DNA of 64,000 nt, from the NCBI RefSeq assembly GCF_963676685.1, contig NC_092346.1, forward strand, positions 36,022,001-36,086,000. The letters are read 5' to 3'. The notes beneath the pieces were generated by a model. That model had not been told where the DNA came from. It made no database searches and saw only the letters and a list, made by a program, of their open reading frames with translations. This DNA comes from Mytilus edulis. Taxonomy: Eukaryota. Positions 1 to 17,503 of this stretch are shown here, piece after piece (position 1 is the stretch's first letter; every line of letters starts with the position of its first letter). A program made the position numbers and the translations under genes.

Positions 1-915
1 GTAGATTCTTAATTTTTGGTCCCATTTTCAAATTGGTCTACATTAAGGTCCAAAGGGTCCAAAATTAAACTTAGTTTGAATTTAACAAAAATTGAATCCT
101 TGGGGTTCTTTGATATGCTGAATCTAAAAACGTACTTAGATTTTTGATTATTGGCCCAGTTTTCAAGTTGTTCAAATCAGGATCCAAAATTATTATATCA
201 AGTATTGTGCAATAGGTAGAAATTTTCAATTGCACCGTATTCAGCAATAGCATGAAATCTTCAATTGCAAAGTATTGTGCAATAGCAAGAAATTTTCAAT
301 TGCACAGTATTGCGCAAAAGCAAGAAATCTTCAATTACACAGTATTGTGCAATAGCAAATATTTTCAATTGCACAGTATTGCGCAATAGCAAGAAATATC
401 TAATTGCACAATATTGTGCAAAAGCAAGAAATTTTCAATTGGAGTTATCTTTTTTTTGTCCAGAATAGTAGTTGAATCAACTTAAATCATTGTTTTATAC
501 AATATACAATGTATATTCACTTTTACTACCAACTGATAAATTAAAACAATCTTTACCATTCAGTGATAACAAGCACTTTATTTTACAATTTAATATTTTA
601 TGATGTATTTAAATGAGTAGTTATTGTTGCAAACTCCATTAGAAATTTGAATTGAGATCAGTTTTGGAAAAAGGGAGAGGGGGATGTGAAAAAAAAAATT
701 TTGGGGGGGTTAAATTTTTCTCATTTCAGATTTCATAAATAAAAAGAAAATTTCTTCAAACATTTTTTTGAGATGATTAATATTCAACAGCATAGTGATT
801 TGCTCAAAGGCAAAAAAAAATATTTTTAGTTGAATGTTGTGTCCATACTTGCCCCAACCGTTCAGGGTTCAACCTCTGCGGTCGTATAAAGCTGCGCCCT
901 GCGGAGCATCTGGTT
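1..915 (+). mobile_element. 3' part of a Helentron/DINE-like non-autonomous element with internal tandem repeats
   Basis: Ends ...CGGTCGTATAAAGCTGCGCCCTGCGGAGCATCTGGTT (subterminal motif, terminal stem-loop, TT). A clearly related copy lies in reverse orientation at ~45945-46990. Family assignment is from structure only. Confidence 0.6.
199..440. repeat. ~39-bp minisatellite (about 6 units) inside the element
   Basis: Repeated CAGTATTGTGCAATAGCAAGAAATTTTCAATTGCA. Confidence 0.85.
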
Positions 916-1201
916 TCATATGATGTAAAAAGTTGATTTCAAATGTCATTTAAATTTTACGTTTTAGTTAATTTAATTTCTGGTCTAAGTTCAGAACTTG
1001 ATAACAAAAGTCAAAGTCCTGCCATTCTTTACACTCATGCTTTATACAAAACCTTTGACCCCTTCAAACAGTACCTTTCACTTGAATATTTACATAGTCC
1101 TGGACTTTTTATTCTTTAAAGTAAATTTGAACCTCTGATTAGATTACTCTCAAGACTTTAAGCATTATTTATAGCTGACATTTCATTTTATTCTTTTTCA
1201 G

Positions 1202-1370
1202 GTTTGTTGTATATGATCTTTAAACATGCGGTAGACCGCTACAATATCTATTTTGCATACAAGAGGTCACGATCATCAGATCAGGTAAGACTTGCTAGCA
1301 ATCAACTTTGTAGTGGTAGCTGTCATCATATTACAGTGTAATATTGTTTTCTTCATGATCGTCAAATCAG
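1202..1370 (+). CDS. TMEM63: TMEM63/CSC1-like (OSCA family) channel, exon encoding TM8-TM9; +1 frameshift as assembled
   Basis: Acceptor TTCTTTTTCAG at 1201. Translates (G)LLYMIFKHAVDRYNIYFAYKRSR, then after a 1-nt shift LAINFVVVAVIILQCNIVFFMIVKS-G|GTAAG (donor 1371). Matches my recollection of vertebrate TMEM63B GLMYMLLKHLVDRYNLYYAY...AVNQVVAAPILCLFWLLFFSTMRTG. Length is 169 nt where a phase 1-1 exon needs 3n. Confidence 0.85.
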
Positions 1371-4300
1371 GTAAGACTTGCTAGCAATTAACTTTGTAGT
1401 GGTAGCTGTCATCATATTACAGTGTACTATTGTCTTCTTCATGATCGTCAGATCAGGTAAGACCTGCTAGCAATTAACTTTGTAGTGGTAGCTGTCATCA
1501 TATTACAGTGTAATATTGTCTTCTTCACGATTGTCAGATCAGGTAAGACCTTCCTAGCAATCAACTTTTGAGTGGTCATGTTACAGGGTAATATTGTGTT
1601 CTTCACGATCGTCAGATCAGGTAAAACTTGCTAGCAATCAACTTTGTAGTGGTAGCTGTCATCATATTACAGTGTAATATTGTTTTCTTCATGATCATCA
1701 GATAAGGTAAGACTTGCTAGCAACCAACTTTGTAGTGGTAGCTGTCATCATGTTACAGTGTAATATTGTCTTCCTCACGATCGTCAGATCAGGTAAGACC
1801 TTCCTAGCAATCAACTTTGTAGTGGTAGCTGTCATCATGTTACAGTGTAATATTGTCTTCCTCACGATCGTCAGATCAGGTAAGACCTTCCTAGCAATTA
1901 ACTTTGTAGTGGTAGCTGTCATCATATTACAGTGTAATATTGTGTTCTTCACGATCGTCAGATCAGGTAAGACTTGCTAGCAATTAACCTTGTAGCGGTA
2001 GCTGTCATCATGTTACAGTGTAATATTGTCTTCTTCACGATTGTCAGATCAGGTAAGACCTTCCTAGCAATCAACTTTGTAGTGGTAGCTGTCATCATAT
2101 TACAGTGTAATATTGTTTTCTTTATGTTCATCAGATTAGGTAAGACTTGCTAGCCATCAAGTTTGTAGTGGTAGCTGTCATCATGTTACAGTGTAATATT
2201 GTCTTCTTCACGATTGTCAGATCAGGTAAGACCTTCCTAGCAATCAACTTTGTAGTGGTAGCTGTCATCATTTTACAGTGTAATATTGTTTTCTTTATGT
2301 CCATCAGATTAGGTAAGGCTTGCTAGCCATCAACTTTGTAGTGTTAGCTGTCTTTATGTTACAGTGTAATATTGTCTTCTTCACGATTGTCAGATCAGGT
2401 AAGACCTTCCTAGCAATCAACTTTGTAGTGGTAGCTGTCATCATATTACAGTGTAATATTGTTTTCTTTATGTCCATCAGATTAGGTAAGACTTGCTAGC
2501 CATCAACTTTGTAGTGTTAGCTGTCATCATGTTACAGTATAAAATTGTTTTCTTCACGATCATCAGATCAGGTAAGACTTGCTAGCAACCAACTTTGTAG
2601 TGGTAGCTGTCATCTTGTTACAGTGTAATATTGTCTTCTTCACGATCGTCAGATCAGGTAAGACCTTCCTAGCAATCAACTTTGTAGTGGTAGCTGTCAT
2701 CATGTTACAGTGTAATATTGTCTTCCTCACGATCGTCAGATCAGGTAAGACCTTCCTAGCAATCAACTTTGTAGTGGTAGCTGTCATCATGTTACAGTGT
2801 AATATTGTCTTCTTCACGATTGTCAGATCAGGTAAGACCTTCCTAGCAATCAACTTTGTAGTGGTAGCTGTCATCATATTACAGTGTAATATTGTTTTCT
2901 TAATGTCCATCAGATTAGGTAAGACTTGCTAGGCATCAACTTTGTAGTGTTAGCTGTCATCATGTTACAGTGTAAAATTGTTTTCTTCACGATCATTCGA
3001 TCAGGTAAGACTTGCTAGCAACCAACTTTGTAGTGGTAGCTGTCATCATGTTATAGTGTAATATTGTCTTCTTCATGATCGTCAGATCAGGTAAGACCTT
3101 CCTAGCAATCAACTTTGTAGTGGTAGCTGTCTTCATGTTACAGTGTAATATTGTCTTCTTCACGATCGTCAGATCAGGTAAGACCTTCCTAGCAATCAAC
3201 TTTGTAGTGGTAGCTGTCATCATATTACAGTGTAATATTGTTTTCTTAATGTCCATCAGATTAGGTAAGACTTGCTAGGCATCAACTTTGTAGTGTTAGC
3301 TGTCATCATGTTACAGTGTAAAATTGTTTTCTTCACGATCATCCGATCAGGTAAGACTTGCTAGCAACCAACTTTGTAGTGGTAGCTGTCATCATATTAC
3401 AGTGTAATATTGTCTTCTTCACGATCGTCAGATCAGGTAAGACCTTCCTAGCAATCAACTTTGTAGTGGTAGCTGTCATCATGTTACAGTGTAATATTGT
3501 CTTCTTCACGATCGTCAGATCAGGTAAGACCTTCCTAGCAATCAACTTTGTAGTGGTAGCTGTCATCATGTTACAGTGTAATATTGTCTTCCTCACGATC
3601 ACCAGATCAGGTAAGACCTTCCTAGCAATCAACTTTGTAGTGTTAGCTGTCATCATGTTACAGTGTAAAATTGTTTTCTTCACGATCATCAGATCAGGTA
3701 AGACTTGCTAGCAACCAACTTTGTAGTGGTAGCTGTCATCATGTTACAGTGTAATATTGTCTTCTTCACGATCGTCAGATCAGGTAAGACCTTCCTTGCA
3801 ATCAACTTTGTAGTGGTAGCTGTCATCATGTTACAGTGTAATATTGTCTTCTTCACGATCACCAGATCAAGTAAGACCTTCCTAGCAATCAACTTTGTAG
3901 TGGTAGCTGTCATCATGTTACAGTGTAATATTGTCTTCTTCACGATTGTCAGATCAGGTAAGACTTGCTAGCAATCAACTTTGTAGTGGTAGCTGTTATC
4001 ATATTACAGTGTAATATTGTCTTCTTCACGATCATCAGATAAGGTAGACTTGCTAGCAATCAACTTTGTAGTGGTAGCTATCATCATATTACAGTGTAAT
4101 ATTGTTTTCTTCATGATCGTCAGATCAGGTAAGACTTGCTAGCAATTAACTTTGTAGTGGTAGCTGTCATCATATTACAGTGTAATATTGTCTTCTTCAC
4201 GATTGTCAGATCAGGTAAGACCTTCCTAGCAATCAACTTTGTAGTGGTCATGTTACAGGGTAATATTGTGTTCTTCACGATCGTCAGATCAGGTAAAACT

Positions 4301-6680
4301 TGCTAGCAATCAACTTTGTAGTGGTAGCTGTCATCATATTACAGTGTAATATTGTTTTCTTCATGATCATCAGATAAGGTAAGACTTGCTAGCAACCAAC
4401 TTTGTAGTGGTAGCTGTCATCATGTTACAGTGTAATATTGTCTTCCTCACGATCGTCAGATCAGGTAAGACCTTCCTAGCAATCAACTTTTTAGTGGTAG
4501 CTGTCATCATATTACAGTGTAATATTGTTTTCTTCATGATCGTCAGATCAGGTAAGACTTGCTAGCAATTAACCTTGTAGCGGTAGCTGTCATCATGTTA
4601 CAGTGTAATATTGTCTTCTTCACGATTGTCAGATCAGGTAAGACCTTCCTAGCAATCAACTTTGTAGTGGTAGCTGTCATCATATTACAGTGTAATATTG
4701 TTTTCTTTATGTTCATCAGATTAGGTAAGACTTGCTAGCCATCAAGTTTGTAGTGGTAGCTGTCATCATGTTACAGTGTAATATTGTCTTCTTCACGATT
4801 GTCAGATCAGGTAAGACCTTCCTAGCAATCAACTTTGTAGTGGTAGCTGTCATCATATTACAGTGTAATATTGTTTTCTTTATGTCCATCAGATTAGGTA
4901 AGGCTTGCTAGCCATCAACGTTGTAGTGTTAGCTCTCTTTATGTTACAGTGTAATATTGTCTTCTTCACGATTGTCAGATCAGGTAAGACCTTCCTAGCA
5001 ATCAACTTTGTAGTGGTAGCTGTCATCATATTACAGTGTAATATAGTTTTCTTTATGTCCATCAGATTAGGTAAGACTTGCTAGCCATCAACTTTGTAGT
5101 GTTAGCTGTCATCATGTTACAGTATAAAATTGTTTTCTTCACGATCATCAGATCAGGTAAGACTTGCTAGCAACCAACTTTGTAGTGGTAGCTGTCATCA
5201 TGTTACAGTGAAATATTGTCTTCTTCACGATCGTCAAATCAGGTAAGACCTTCCTAGCAATCAACTTTGTAGTGGTAGCTGTCATCATGTTACAGTGTAA
5301 TATTGTCTTCCTCACGATCGTCAGATCAGGTAAGACCTTCCTAGCAATCAACTTTGTAGTGGTAGCTGTCATCATGTTACAGTGTAATATTGTCTTCTTC
5401 ACGAATGTCAGATCAGGTAAGACCTTCCTAGCAATCAACTTTGTAGTGGTAGCTGTCATCATATTACAGTGTAATATTGTTTTCTTAATGTCCATCAGAT
5501 TAGGTAAGACTTGCTAGGCATCAACTTTGTAGTGTTAGCTGTCATCATGTTACAGTGTAAAATTGTTTTCTTCACGATCATTCGATCAGGTAAGACTTGC
5601 TAGCAACCAACTTTGTAGTGGTAGCTGTCATCATGTTACAGTGTAATATTGTCTTCTTCACGATCGTCAGATCAGGTAAGACCTTCCTAGCAATCAACTT
5701 TGTAGTGGTAGCTGTCTTCATGTTACAGTGTAATATTGTCTTCTTCACGATCGTCAGATCAGGTAAGACCTTCCTAGCAATCAACTTTGTAGTGGTAGCT
5801 GTCATCATTTTACAGTGTAATATTGTTTTCTTAATGTCCATCAGATTAGGTAAGACTTGCTAGGCATCAACTTTGTAGTGTTAGCTGTCATCATGTTACA
5901 GTGTAAAATTGTTTTCTTCACGATCATCCGATCAGGTAAGACTTGCTAGCAACCAACTTTGTAGTGGTAGCTGTCATCATATTACAGTGTAATATTGTCT
6001 TCTTCACGATCGTCAGATCAGGTAAGACCTTCCTAGCAATCAACTTTGTAGTGGTAGCTGTCATCATGTTACAGTGTAATATTGTCTTCTTCACGATCGT
6101 CAGATCAGGTAAGACCTTCCTAGCAATCAACTTTGTAGTGGTAGCTGTCATCATGTTACAGTGTAATATTGTCTTCCTCACGATCACCAGATCAGGTAAG
6201 ACCTTCCTAGCAATCAACTTTGTAGTGTTAGCTGTCATCATGTTACAGTGTAAAATTGTTTTCTTCACGATCATCCGATCAGGTAAGACTTGCTAGCAAC
6301 CAACTTTGTAGTGGTAGCTGTCATCATGTTACAGTGTAATATTGTCTTCTTCACGATCGTCAGATCAGGTAAGACCTTCCTTGCAATCAACTTTGTAGTG
6401 GTAGCTGTCATCATGTTACAGTGTAATATTGTCTTCTTCACGATCACAAGATCAAGTAAGACCTTCCTAGCAATCAACTTTGTAGTGGTAGCTGTCATCA
6501 TGTTACAGTGTAATATTGTCTTCTTCACGATTGTCAGATCAGGTAAGACTTGCTAGCAATCAACTTTGTAGTGGTAGCTGTTATCATATTACAGTGTAAT
6601 ATTGTCTTCTTCACGATCATCAGATAAGGTAGACTTGCTAGCAATCAACTTTGTAGTGGTATCTGTAATCATGCTTCAGT
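1267..6680 (+). repeat. 86/87-bp tandem array (~62 units) derived from the TMEM63 exon 3' half and its donor site, organised as two higher-order blocks
   Basis: Unit GTAAGAC(TTG/CTTC)CTAGCAATCAACTTTGTAGTGGTAGCTGTCATCATRTTACAGTGTAATATTGTYTTCTTCACGATCGTCAGATCAG. Diagnostic variants and ORFs recur at a 2585-bp offset (1986/4571, 2563/5148, 3339/5924, 4041/6626). Confidence 0.97.
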
Positions 6681-7042
6681 TAAGGTTTACCTCTGTGTAC
6701 AGACTTACCTGTGCAGTTTAAAAAGAAAATTGTTTCAGAAAGATAAAATGTTTTTTTCGATTTTAATGGGCATTTTTTTTAAATGAAGTAAGTTGGAATA
6801 CAACTTTGATGTGCTCCCTATGAGGTAACAACTGTTTTGTTTTGTTTATTGATCGTCCTAGATTGGCATGGACAATTGACAGACAATAGATATCTACACA
6901 CCTATGGGTGAGTTAAAGAGTGTAAATGAATGGACCATTTTAAATGCAATTCAGGTATTTGTTTATTTTTACACCTTCTGCATAAACGAATAAATTGTGT
7001 AAACAAATTGCCTTTCAATTTTAAACCTCTTGTTACATATAG

Positions 7043-7164
7043 TTTCAGAAGGAACAAATGCAGTGTTTGTGTTTTCTTCTGTGTGTTTATTCTTGTCAGT
7101 TGTGATATTTATTGGCAAGGCATTCTTTGGATGGTTTAAATATCTAGATACCAATAGATATAAG
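7043..7164 (+). CDS. TMEM63: TMEM63 exon encoding TM10
   Basis: Phase-1 acceptor at 7042 (alternative in-frame AG at 7048). Translates SEGTNAVFVFSSVCLFLSVVIFIGKAFFGWFKYLDTNRYK, donor GTAATA at 7165. Resembles TMEM63B ...[32 protein letters not shown]. Confidence 0.88.
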
Positions 7165-8357
7165 GTAATAAAAACTTATACTTATAGACATTTATTTCTT
7201 TAAATTTTCTTTTTATTACAATTTCAATCAGCATGATCACTCTTTAACTCACAAAATCTTTCTTGATCTTGTATAGGGTAAAAGGTTTGCACCTTTATTT
7301 ATTTTAATTGTGAAGCTTGTTTAAAACGATTCTTTCTGTTATTTGATTGATGGAGTAAATTGTTTAATTTGACAATTTTGATAAATGTACTTTGTTTGTG
7401 TTTACTTGCAATTGATAAAATCAGATTGATAGAAATGTGAAAGTTGTTGAAACTTATAGAACCGTAAGCAGATCTTAGATATCAGATAGAAGTAAATCAG
7501 AAAATATTGCAGCATTGATAATGACACTCATATATCTTTCTTTTAAAAAATTAAATGATTCCTGTGGATTGGTTTATTTTTCGGGGTATTAATTTTCATG
7601 GGAAGTTATAGGTAAACCATGAATTAAGATGCTCTACAAAGTTCCAATTCATAATATCTATGAAAATTGTTCAAATAAAAGTGAATTCACAGTAGTTTAG
7701 ATAAAAATTTAGGTGGAAAAGCTTTATACTTTTTGTGTTTTTACAATTTAGGAAAATCTATTTTTATCACAGTCATTTTGTTGCAAGTTTTTCTAATTTA
7801 CTTCTAAAACCATTGAAAAATCATCTAAGTTAAGCTTTGCTAATTGTTGAAGCTTATTTGTGATTTAAAAGTTAACAATTTTTGAACAGCGGTATACTAC
7901 TGTTGCCTTTATTTATAGTCGCATCTTAAAGAATATCAATATTTATGGTCAGATTTGAAAACAAATAGCAATATAGTATGTTGATCTTTGTAGTAAATAA
8001 ATTATGTAAAAATTGTGTATTATTGACCTTTCAAAAATCATTCAAAGGAATTTTGCACAAATTAGAGCATATAAAAGGTTTAAGAAAGTAAGAGTTCAAT
8101 ACTGTGGATACATTTATTTTCGTGGGCACCAATATTCATGGATTGCGGAAATTTGCATTTTCGTGGATATTTGATTTCGTGGTTTTCAAAAAGTCAACAA
8201 TTAATCTTACCATAAATTGGAACAATTTGTTCCCAAGTTGAGATTTTTAATAATAGAGTTATACCTACCAGTTAAAATTGACATTATTGAACATTGACAT
8301 GTCTGTGTCATTTTTAGGCTTTTGTGGATAGTTGGCAATCATACCACATCTTCTTTT

Positions 8358-9100
8358 AAGCTCACCTGGTCCGTCGTCCGTCGTCGTCCTGCGTCCGTCG
8401 TCGTTAACTTTTACAAAAACCTTCTCTGTAACTACTGGGCCAAATTTAATCAAACTTGGCCACAATCATCATTGGGGTATCTAGTTTAAAAAATGTGTCC
8501 GGTGACCCGGCCAACCAACCAAAATGGCCGCCATTGCTAAAAATAGAACATAGGGGTAAAATGCAGTTTTTGGATTATAACACAAAAACCAAAGCATTTA
8601 AAGCAAATCTAACATTGGGTTAAATTGTTTATCAGGTCAAGATCTATCTGCCCTGAAATTTTCAGACGAATCGGACAACCTGTTGTTGGGTTGCTGTCCC
8701 TGAATTGGTAATTTTATGGAAATTTTGCTGTTTTTGGTTATTATATTGAATATTATTATAGATAGAGATAAACTGTAAACCGCAATAATGTACAGCAAAG
8801 TAAGACCTAAAAATAAGTCAACATGACCAAAATGGTCCCTAAGGAGTTATTGACCTTTATAGTCAATTTTTAACAATTTTCATAAAATTTGTAATTTTTT
8901 TCTAACATTTTCCACTGAAACTACTGGGCCAAGATCATTATAGATAGAGATAATTGTAAGCAACAAGAATGTTCAGTAAAGGAAGTTTTGCAAACACATC
9001 ACAATCACCAAAACACAATTTTGTCATGAATCCATCTGCTTCCTTTGTTTAATATTCACATATACCAAGGTGAGCGACACAGGCTCTTAAGAGCCTCTAG
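8358..9100 (+). mobile_element. Helentron-associated (HINE/DINE-like) non-autonomous element in the TMEM63 intron
   Basis: Subterminal inverted motif GCTCACCT...AGGTGAGC, (CGT/GTCC)n microsatellite near the 5' end, terminal hairpin AGGCTCTTAAGAGCCT, T-rich flanks. Confidence 0.75.
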
Positions 9101-9484
9101 TTTATATTTATTAAATTAGAATATAATTCGCGTTAACTAGTTCTCATCGCAAACATCTAGGTGATCTAGAAATAAAAACATCCCTAGGATGTTCGATCAC
9201 TCCACCTGTGTTATACAGGTGTAATGAATATTATTAAAAATTGAAATTCATTGAACATTTAAATTTGTGGTTTCCATCAAATTCCATGTATGAACGAGGT
9301 CCTCGAAAATTGGTATCTTAACAAATAATTAAATTCTTCAGAGAACAATTGAAGGTCTTTCCACCTCGATAATAAGAATGAAATTTAAAAAAGGATGTCA
9401 CTCCTTGTTGATGTAATTTAGTTCTTCAAATTGATATAAAAAATAAGATTAAAAGGTATATGTAGAACACTTAATTGTTTTATT

Positions 9485-10780
9485 AAGAACAGAAAATAAT
9501 TTTTAGCAACGGTCAAAATCTAGAACGTCAAATTGACCTTTGACCTTGACCTCAATTTCAAGGTCAAAGGTCAGTGATCTCAAATCAAAAGACCCCAGGT
9601 CAATCATTTGTATGGTTGTGGAGAAATACTGATTTCAAATACATTAGGGGAGAAAACTCCTACAAGGGTTAACCCAAACACTTCGACTGAAATAGTTTGA
9701 AGTTGTGCCTTTTTTTAAACAGTAATTTGGCAAACAAATCATATTATTTACTGTAACAGTTTCTTTTTAGTAACGATAACAAGCAAAATTCAAAATCTAT
9801 AACATGACCTTGACCCTCGACCTTGATCTCAATTTCAAGTTCATAGGTCAGTAAACTCAAAACGGAAGACCGGATGTCAATCACTTGTATGGTTGTGGAG
9901 AAATACTGATTTGAAATACATAAGGGGAGAAAACTCCTGTATCTTTCGTCCCTCTTCTATAAGGGTTAACCAAAACACTTTGACTGAAATAGGTTGAAGT
10001 TGCGCCTTATTGTAAACAGTTATTTCGCAAACACATCATATCATTTACTGTCACAGTTTCTATGGCATAACGATAACAAGCAAAATTCAAAATTTAGAAC
10101 TTGACCTTTACCTTTGACCTTGGTCTCAATTTCAAGGTCATAGGTCAGTGATCTCAAAACGGAAGACTGGAAATCACTTGTATGGTTGTGGAGAAATACT
10201 GATTTGAAATACATAAGGGGAGAAAACTCCTATTAGGGTTAACCAAAACACTTCGACTGAAATAGGTTGAAGTTGCGCCTTATTGTAAACAGTTATTTGG
10301 CAAACACATCATATCATTTTCTGTCACAGTTTCTGTGGTATAACGATAACAAGCAAAATTCAAAATTTAGAACTTGACCTTGACCTTTGACCTTGACCTC
10401 AATTTCCTTCAAATGGACCAAGGATTTCATATCAAAAGACTGTAGGCCTCTACGACTTATAACGTATGAATTTATCCAACAAATCGCCTATCTTAAATTT
10501 TCAAAGGAAAATAACTCCCATAAGATGTCTTCCGATCAGTCAAGTCAAAATACACCAAATGCTTCTCAAGAGTAGACGAACAATTTGGTGCAAACAGTTT
10601 GCTAAAATCTTTTACGGTTTTAGAGATATAGCGATAACAAGAAAAAAAGGACGCGGGGAGATAACTCCTATAAGAATAAGTGCTCGGACAAAAAAGCATC
10701 TCAGACGGCAGAAGAAAAAAAAAATAATCAGAAGAAAAAAAAATAATCAGAAGAAAAACTTTTCGTGGAAAGACCTAATA
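9485..10780 (-). mobile_element. Repeat element with ~270-290-bp internal tandem units (3 plus a partial)
   Basis: TGACCTTTGACCTTGACCTCAATTTCAAGGTC blocks recur at ~9535, ~9805, ~10100 and ~10375, followed by conserved TTGTATGGTTGTGGAGAAATACTGATT in the full units. Probably Helentron-like. Confidence 0.6.
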
Positions 10781-17356: not shown

Positions 17357-17503
17357 CCATTTATAGCCAGTGTTCTACTAAACAGGAATAGTACAGATGA
17401 AAGTGTGCAAGTATCAACCAGTTCTGAACCAGTAGGGGTACAAGGCAAGACCAACTATGGGTCTGTTAATGAAAAACACACACATGATCCTTATGAACCA
17501 TAA
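17357..17503 (+). CDS. TMEM63: TMEM63 terminal coding exon
   Basis: TTTTACTTTTTCAG acceptor, phase 0. Translates PFIASVLLNRNSTDESVQVSTSSEPVGVQGKTNYGSVNEKHTHDPYEP*. FIASVL resembles the YIAQVL motif of the TMEM63B tail. Confidence 0.8.
   Translation, partial: PFIASVLLNRNSTDESVQVSTSSEPVGVQGKTNYGSVNEKHTHDPYEP

What the first reader, a model, noticed from the sequence alone, without database searches (positions are those of the whole stretch)
1267..6680. A 5.4-kb satellite made from a TMEM63 channel exon: ~62 tandem copies of the TM9 coding segment plus its splice donor
Seen: the array starts inside an exon encoding LLYMIFKHAVDRYNIYFAY, and each unit translates LAINFVVVAVI(I/M)LQCNIVFFTIVRSG ending in CAG|GTAAGA. 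A phase-matched exon encoding the next hydrophobic helix (..FFGWFKYL..) follows at 7043. Known: in TMEM63/OSCA channels the segment between these two is the penultimate helix (AVNQVVAAPILCLFWLLFFSTMRTG in my recollection of human TMEM63B). No other TM9-coding sequence is visible between the flanking exons. Inference: the satellite arose by tandem amplification of the gene's own exon end, so the spliceosome faces about 60 near-identical consensus 5' splice sites. Reading through an 87-bp unit keeps frame and adds a 29-aa helix copy, while reading through an 86-bp unit hits GGT AAG ACT TGC TAG (stop). The second unit is the stop type, which would confine productive splicing to the first TM9 donor.
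Basis: partly seen in the sequence, partly recalled or inferred. Interest (0 to 1): 0.9.

Follow-up and report, generated by a model that had tools for sequence, protein, structure and literature searches.

The report
Exon-end minisatellite in a dead TMEM63 copy
The 5.4-kb array is real and is built from the end of a TMEM63-type channel exon plus its splice donor, but it lies in a 5'-truncated, frame-broken, apparently silent duplicate of two neighbouring full-length genes, so it is an expanded "mirage"-type minisatellite in a pseudogene and not a splicing puzzle in a working channel gene.

Summary
Observation confirmed. Window 1267-6680 holds about 62 tandem units of 86/87 bp. Each unit carries the TM9-type coding segment, the donor CAG|GTAAGA and about 15 intron bases.

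- Two paralogs lie 40 and 100 kb upstream on the same contig. Each carries this exon once, uninterrupted, and it aligns to TMEM63B residues 649-702 (E 9e-10).
- The window copy shares DNA with them only from about window 990 onward.
- Every exon before "exon A" is missing, both within 21 kb upstream and genome-wide.
- Exon A is fused at a 5-nt microhomology (TCACG) to the last 13 nt of a unit. This removes the linker and most of TM9 (85 nt relative to copy 1).
- The first donor is therefore in phase 0, whereas the TM10 exon (7049-7164) needs phase 1.
- Three RNA-seq runs show essentially no coverage of the TM10 exon and no junctions from unit donors.

All three paralogs begin a second unit right after GTAAGA. 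A two-unit duplication is therefore ancestral, and only the dead copy expanded: about 30 units first, then a 2.6-kb block duplication (98.8% identical).

The kind is known: amphioxus "mirages" and the human F7 IVS7 VNTR. Earlier notes of this scan report other donor arrays elsewhere in this genome. Paralog 2 independently carries a 71-bp x5 exon-end/donor array.

The parts
440..916 (.). High-copy dispersed repeat (transposon-like) lying just upstream of the point where homology to the paralogs begins
   Evidence: 964 first-look candidates genome-wide, 94-96% identity over query positions 1-392 and 391-477.
990..1201 (+). Start of the duplicated segment: remnant of the intron that precedes exon A in the paralogs
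   Evidence: blastn homology to copy 1 starts at window 1004 and to copy 2 at window 990. Nothing upstream matches except repeats.
1202..1284 (+). Exon A remnant. Positions 1202-1271 are homologous to the paralogs' exon (..LLYMIFKHAVDRYNIYFAYKRSR). From 1267 it is the tail of a repeat unit, giving ..SRSSDQ and a donor at 1284|1285 in phase 0.
   Evidence: Relative to copy 1, 85 nt (linker INKYIHQT plus most of TM9) are missing between two TCACG motifs.
1267..6680 (+). Array of about 62 units of 86/87 bp. Each unit is the TM9-type segment plus CAG|GTAAGA plus about 15 nt of intron.
1467..4095 (+). First of two higher-order blocks of about 30 units
   Evidence: 98.8% identical to 4139-6680, with one 87-bp unit indel.
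4139..6680 (+). Second higher-order block (recent 2.6-kb duplication inside the array)
7049..7164 (+). TM10-type exon, open. It starts in phase 1 and ends in phase 0. An alternative AG lies at 7042|7043.
   Evidence: The acceptor is placed by homology with copy 1. RNA depth is about 0.
17357..17503 (+). Candidate last coding exon (PFIASVL.. to TAA), open, with a phase-0 acceptor
   Evidence: The motif matches the FVASVL segment of the full-length relative P0011 (printout).

Best explanation
The array is a 'mirage'-type minisatellite, meaning tandem repeats that span an exon-intron boundary. It has expanded inside a 5'-truncated, non-processed duplicate (pseudogene fragment) of a TMEM63/OSCA-like channel gene.

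Inferred history:
1. In the ancestral gene, a tandem duplication of about 88 bp copied the last 82 nt of the TM9-coding exon plus GTAAGA into the intron. The upstream donor stayed in use.
2. The gene multiplied into two full-length copies (copy 1 on the + strand, copy 2 on the - strand) and one 3' partial copy, which is the window.
3. In the partial copy, free of selection, unequal exchange or slippage expanded the intronic unit to about 30 copies. A 2.6-kb block then duplicated, giving about 62.
4. A microhomology (TCACG) deletion or array-edge exchange removed the linker and the exonic TM9, fusing exon A out of frame to a unit tail.

Consequence: the roughly 60 consensus donors are decoys in a locus that is not detectably transcribed, so they have no bearing on channel production.

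Shown: the anatomy, the truncation, the frame break, the single-locus distribution, the copy number and the absence of RNA signal. Inferred: the order of events and the mutational mechanism.
For: Array and unit content.

Intact single exon in copy 1 (L001 8280-8447) and in copy 2 (L003, minus strand). Its homology to TMEM63B 649-702 and TMEM63A/C. Its homology to a full-length RSN1_TM + PHM7_cyt + RSN1_7TM protein, P0011.

Truncation:
- DNA homology starts at window 990-1004.
- tblastn finds ordered exons for P0011 residues 258/327-697 in copies 1 and 2, but none before residue 640 in the 21 kb upstream of exon A.
- The two preceding exons exist only twice in the genome.

Frame break.

Ancestral second unit in all three copies, sharing the TAG variant.

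Block duplication at 98.8% identity.

Single locus.

Reads: no joints and about 0 depth on 7077-7198 in X21, X22 and X24. DNA depth ratio of about 19 matches the assembly.

Known kind: PMC3087553, PMC1557585.
Against: - The three remaining exons (exon A up to the junction, TM10, last exon) are still open. Only 113 codons are involved, though, so under neutrality this is expected about one time in three (my estimate).
- RNA sampling was partial: 6-18% of three runs, tissues unknown.
- A few RNA reads lie on the unit at 6467-6527. They may be array transcripts, or they may be cross-mapping from the expressed paralog exon, which is about 95% identical over that stretch.
- The exon A/array junction at 1267 was not checked against reads. 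Only the 3' edge was.
Confidence: 0.85

Rival explanations
1. One reading: a functional TMEM63 gene whose TM9 exon end was amplified in place. Splicing uses the first donor, and the other roughly 60 are silent decoys or alternative helix-adding donors.
For: The unit is TM9-derived, and the 87-bp units stay in frame. Both flanking exons are open and the TM10 exon is phase-matched to the unit frame. In human F7 the most upstream of several identical tandem donors is the one chosen (PMC1557585).
Against: No upstream exons exist for this copy. Exon A meets the first donor in phase 0 with TM9 missing, and stops intervene before any in-frame unit. There is no RNA on the TM10 exon and there are no joints.
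Confidence: 0.04
2. TCAG|GTAAGA) used as one of many tandem alternative exons in some transcript.
For: I checked this by counting on the sequence. From the AG of CTAG to the donor is 72 nt and symmetric in phase. A phase-0 route also exists formally: donor 1284 to the internal ..TTACAG| acceptor, a 34-nt piece, then 7049. Low RNA depth (2-4 reads) lies on 6467-6527.
Against: Only 14-15 nt separate adjacent units, which is too short for an intron. Exon A's phase-0 donor does not fit phase-1 cassettes. The 34-nt route would leave only 11 residues of TM9. No joints were reported. The few reads can be explained by cross-mapping from paralog 1's exon.
Confidence: 0.05
3. Assembly artefact: the array length, the 2.6-kb internal duplication or the exon A junction is a product of long-read mis-assembly, and the real locus has few units or an intact exon.
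For: Two 98.8%-identical blocks are the kind of structure assemblers can create. The amphioxus authors reported a mis-assembled mirage (PMC3087553). The 5' junction was not checked with reads.
Against: Unit k-mer depth in run X2 is about 19 times single copy, matching the multiplicity in the assembly. The 3' edge is reproduced exactly in a 630-bp contig. The blocks differ at 30 sites and by one unit, so they are not a verbatim copy. The truncation evidence does not depend on the array.
Confidence: 0.06

Closest known systems
Amphioxus 'mirages' (Adh3, globin genes BflGb6/BflGb9; PMC3087553 and the Adh3 work it cites)
   Same: Minisatellite-like tandem duplications spanning an exon-intron boundary. 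Units of tens to about 160 bp carry splice signals. Units are 81-100% identical to each other, and array edges escape homogenisation.
   Different: The reported mirages have 2-6 units or so in expressed genes that still splice normally. Here there are about 62 units, in a mollusc, in a truncated dead paralog whose own exonic unit has been lost. The live paralogs keep only 1-2 units.
Human F7 intron-7 37-bp VNTR (PMC1557585)
   Same: The first repeat spans the exon-intron boundary, so the authentic donor is followed by identical pseudo-donors.
   Different: F7 is a working gene with 5-8 repeats, and 5'-to-3' scanning selects the first donor. In the window there is no productive first donor and no detectable transcript. 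Paralog 2's 71-bp x5 array is the closer analogue.
Non-processed (duplicated) pseudogene fragments arising from partial segmental duplication
   Same: Introns are retained. It is a 3' part only, on the same chromosome arm as the parents, about 78-84% identical to them in DNA, with no upstream exons or promoter.
   Different: It carries a large exon-derived minisatellite that the parents lack.
Intron gain by tandem duplication across AG|GT (Rogers model, as discussed in PMC3087553)
   Same: A tandem duplication that includes a splice site puts former coding sequence into an intron.
   Different: No new intron is created here. An existing intron was lengthened by copies of the exon end.

Membership tests
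TMEM63/OSCA channel gene (Pfam RSN1_TM + PHM7_cyt + RSN1_7TM) | The exon sequence is homologous to the M9 region of TMEM63 proteins | tested here: met
   Paralog 1's intact exon matches TMEM63B 649-702 at E 9e-10, and also TMEM63A/C. It matches P0011 640-697. The units are about 90% identical in DNA to that exon. A 29-aa unit on its own gives no hit.
TMEM63/OSCA channel gene (Pfam RSN1_TM + PHM7_cyt + RSN1_7TM) | Full set of exons encoding the three domains | tested here: not met
   For the window locus, no exon before P0011 residue 640 is found within 21 kb upstream. The two preceding exons are present only in copies 1 and 2 genome-wide.
TMEM63/OSCA channel gene (Pfam RSN1_TM + PHM7_cyt + RSN1_7TM) | Continuous reading frame from the pre-TM9 linker through TM9 into TM10 | tested here: not met
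   85 nt are missing relative to copy 1. The donor is in phase 0 where phase 1 is needed. Two stops occur on read-through.
Mirage-type minisatellite (tandem repeat across an exon-intron boundary) | The unit contains the exon end, the splice site and the start of the intron | tested here: met
   The alignment of the three copies shows that a unit is the last ~72-82 nt of the exon, then GTAAGA, then a few intron bases.
Mirage-type minisatellite (tandem repeat across an exon-intron boundary) | The first unit is the authentic, spliced exon boundary of an expressed gene | tested here: not met
   In the window, the first unit is a 13-18-nt stump fused out of frame, and the locus is not detectably expressed. 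The feature is met structurally in paralogs 1 and 2, but their expression was not tested.
Mirage-type minisatellite (tandem repeat across an exon-intron boundary) | Length instability or polymorphism between haplotypes | not tested
   Only indirect evidence: a 2.6-kb internal block duplication with one unit indel. Runs from five organism labels hold 18-47% of the locus's words, but no copy-number comparison was possible.
Satellite DNA in the usual sense (many loci, high copy) | The unit is found at several unrelated loci | tested here: not met
   Whole-assembly DNA search: all hits lie in this array, plus one hit in each paralogous exon.

The most novel reading that the evidence does not exclude
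The paralog trio is a natural experiment on donor-anchored minisatellites. The same ancestral two-unit duplication stayed at 1-2 decaying units in the two full-length genes but grew to 62 units once a copy was released from selection. This would mean that selection on splicing, not the mutation rate, limits these arrays in live genes. Paralog 2 also carries an independent 71-bp x5 array with five identical TTG|GTGAGT donors. Together with the other donor arrays noted elsewhere in this genome, this could reflect a lineage-specific mutational process targeted at 5' splice sites. It could also provide a non-mammalian test of the 'most upstream donor wins' scanning rule.
Probability: 0.25. Interest if true: 0.55.

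Novelty: new member of a known kind. Interest (0 to 1): 0.3.

Why it matters
The locus is a dead fragment, and the working copies carry the exon once.

It has modest value in three ways:
- It is a clean, datable example of how coding sequence becomes a minisatellite: an exon end is duplicated into the intron, and the intronic copy then expands freely once the gene copy is a pseudogene.
- It is an annotation warning. Gene predictors could string the open 87-bp units into a fake multi-helix protein, or could call this fragment a TMEM63 gene.
- It adds a data point to a pattern this scan has noted repeatedly in this mollusc genome, arrays made of an exon end plus its 5' splice site. That pattern is known from amphioxus and human F7.

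Tried and rejected
- Unit peptide alone against PDB sequences and Pfam: no hits. It is too short, so homology had to be shown through the paralog's intact exon.
- Pfam RSN1_7TM over the whole genome: it found only one exon in each of two paralogs. That was the lead to them, not a count of genes.
- First attempt to use window 7050-7166 as a protein query failed because the frame was wrong. The correct frame is 7051-7164.
- dN/dS on the copy-3 branch, polarising exon A and TM10 changes with copy 2 by eye: about 3 synonymous to 3 non-synonymous changes. Too few to say anything, so it is not used.
- Rescue routes by splicing were examined by phase arithmetic only. The only in-frame route is donor 1284, then an internal TTACAG| acceptor, a 34-nt piece, then 7049. 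It would leave 11 residues of TM9 and has no read support.
- Read laying was deliberately limited to 6467-8290, because the tool turns away long repeats and only one call was allowed. As a result, the exon A junction and expression of the paralogs were not examined.
- Three literature searches for exon-derived satellites and duplicated donors found nothing specific. The 'mirage' and F7 leads came from an earlier scan note, and I verified them in the papers.
- Chance estimate for two donor-spanning events among about five minisatellite events in the two 20-kb paralogs: roughly 0.05 by my own rough calculation. Suggestive only.
Full report
**What is there**

Tandem Repeats Finder reports a single array at window 1267-6680: period 87 (also 173), 62.8 copies, 89% matches. 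Cutting it at unit anchors gives mostly 86- and 87-bp units.
- In one frame, nearly every unit reads LAINFVVVAVI(I/M)LQCNIVFFTIVRSG, followed by the consensus donor CAG|GTAAGA.
- The 87-bp units stay open into the next unit.
- The array is two blocks of about 30 units, 1467-4095 and 4139-6680. They are 98.8% identical and differ by one 87-bp unit, whereas neighbouring units differ by about 10%.

Upstream lies an exon with a good acceptor (1202-1284, LLYMIFKHAVDRYNIYFAY..). Downstream lies an open exon encoding the next helix (..FFGWFKYL..).

**Where the unit comes from**

A whole-assembly DNA search finds the unit only in this array and once each at two other places on the same contig, C3:35920374 (+) and C3:35983098 (-). 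Exon A also hits these two places. The window itself is C3:36022001-36086000.

At both places the exon is continuous. In copy 1 it reads ..YFAYKRSRINKYIHQTAINFVVVAVIMLQCNIVFFTIVRSG, followed by gtaaga.

That 55-residue exon has clear TMEM63/OSCA relatives:
- It aligns to human TMEM63B residues 649-702 (E 9e-10), and to TMEM63A and TMEM63C.
- It has 370 relatives at E 0.001 or better in the representative library.
- One of these is the full-length protein P0011, which carries RSN1_TM, PHM7_cyt and RSN1_7TM.

The unit is the penultimate-helix coding segment plus the 5' splice site. A single 29-aa unit is too short to score on its own.

**Why the window locus is not a working gene**

1. It is truncated.
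   - DNA homology to copies 1 and 2 begins only at window 990-1004, about 200 bp before exon A. It then runs on for at least 20 kb downstream.
   - Just upstream is a high-copy dispersed repeat.
   - tblastn with P0011 finds the ordered exons for residues 258/327-697 in copies 1 and 2. In the 21 kb upstream of the window's exon A it finds nothing before residue 640.
   - The two exons that precede exon A in the paralogs occur exactly twice in the whole assembly, both in those paralogs.
2. The exon is broken.
   - Aligned to copy 1, exon A runs normally to ..AAGAGGTCACG and then jumps to the last 13 nt of a unit (ATCATCAGATCAG|gtaaga).
   - Both sequences share TCACG. Relative to copy 1, 85 nt are missing: the linker INKYIHQT and most of TM9.
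   - The first donor (1284|1285) is consequently phase 0 in exon A's frame, while the TM10 exon needs phase 1.
   - Reading through gives ..KRSRSSDQVRLAS.., with two stops before the first unit that happens to be in frame.
   - I examined possible rescue by splicing through phase arithmetic only. The only in-frame route would retain 11 residues of the helix.
3. RNA shows no sign of use.
   - Reads from three RNA-seq runs (6-18% sampled) were laid on 6467-8290.
   - Depth was about zero over the TM10 exon.
   - There were no joints from any unit donor to 7043 or 7049.
   - A handful of reads lay on one unit. These can be explained by cross-mapping from paralog 1's exon.
   - This is a weak negative. 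The exon A junction itself was not checked with reads.

**Is the array an assembly artefact?**

In DNA run X2, a 60-bp unit contig has depth 84.7 against about 4.3-5 for the single-copy flank. In the assembly, the 31-mers of that stretch occur 13-22 times, mean about 19. The two ratios agree. A 630-bp contig reproduces 6631-7248 exactly, which covers the 3' array edge and the TM10 exon. X2 may not be independent of the assembled individual. Spanning long reads remain the decisive check.

**History (inferred)**

In all three copies the intron begins, right after GTAAGA, with the start of a second unit.
- Copy 1 keeps about 20 nt of it.
- Copy 2 keeps a nearly complete but decayed second unit without a donor.
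- These intronic copies and all array units share ..TAG(C/T)A.. where the exons have ..CAGCA..

An ~88-bp tandem duplication (82 nt of exon plus GTAAGA) therefore predates the gene duplications, and the array descends from the intronic copy. Only the truncated copy expanded it. Losing the exonic unit at the array's left edge completed the break.

The remaining exons are still open: exon A up to the junction, TM10, and a last exon at 17357-17503 ending in TAA. With only 113 codons this carries little weight.

**Comparison with what is known**

Tandem repeats spanning exon-intron boundaries were named "mirages" in amphioxus Adh3 and found again in amphioxus globin genes. Their units are 10-160 bp and they have a few copies. 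Splicing stays normal and length is unstable (PMC3087553).

The human F7 gene has a 37-bp VNTR whose first unit spans the exon 7 donor. The downstream identical pseudo-donors stay silent because the most upstream site is selected (PMC1557585).

I read both papers but did not test that note's claim of a four-fold donor preference. Other notes list several more donor-anchored arrays elsewhere in this genome, so the scan has met this kind before on other DNA.

The window array is a large member of this known kind, in a mollusc, sitting in a pseudogene.

**A related observation**

Paralog 2, which looks intact in every exon examined, has an independent 71-bp x5.1 array (93% matches) at C3:35992756-35993115. 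It consists of the end of the exon encoding ..VEDWRVKYAPSPENIYW plus an identical TTG|GTGAGT donor. Copy 1 has that exon end once. It is the better place to test donor choice.

**Verdict**

The ancestry of the unit is confirmed. The functional reading is not supported. The best explanation is an expanded mirage-type minisatellite in a 5'-truncated, frame-broken, apparently silent TMEM63-like pseudogene fragment (confidence about 0.85). Interest is low to moderate.

Noticed in passing
G000:C3:35992756-35993115 (L004 6756-7115, minus strand), in paralog 2: An independent 71-bp x5.1 tandem array (93% matches). It is made of the end of the exon encoding ..VEDWRVKYAPSPENIYW plus an identical TTG|GTGAGT donor and about 17 intron bases. 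Paralog 1 has that exon end only once. The junction shows TGTG microhomology.
   Followed up: partly
L003 about 7080-7200 (minus strand), in paralog 2's intron after the TM9 exon: A nearly complete second TM9 unit, decayed: it has a 5-6-nt insertion and has lost the GT donor. Paralog 1 (L001 8448-8475) keeps only about 20 nt of the second unit.
   Followed up: yes
window 440-916, with the 35-bp x6.9 tandem repeat at 201-441 beside it: High-copy dispersed element (964 first-look candidates, 94-96% identity), adjacent to a 35-bp internal-looking tandem repeat. It may be a MITE-like element with a repeat core. It sits next to the 5' breakpoint of the partial gene duplicate.
   Followed up: partly
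window 7880-7916: A 37-bp piece with enormous depth in DNA contigs (summed word depth about 530,000) and hundreds of RNA reads per run. All of these reads continue into unlike sequence, with a consistent 30-nt loose-end consensus before 7880. It is a fragment of a very abundant, transcribed repeat.
   Followed up: no
window 8286-9105: About 820 bp that are absent from paralog 1 at the homologous position: homology runs c1 9574-10086 to window 7750-8285, then c1 10084-10195 to window 9106-9217. It looks like a transposon insertion.
   Followed up: no
L003 about 5760-5890 (minus strand), TM10 exon of paralog 2: The TM10 exon of paralog 2 is open but carries an in-frame insertion of about 18 nt. 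It reads ..GRFRHQ.. where copies 1 and 3 have ..GWFK(H/Y)L.., so paralog 2 is the most diverged copy.
   Followed up: partly
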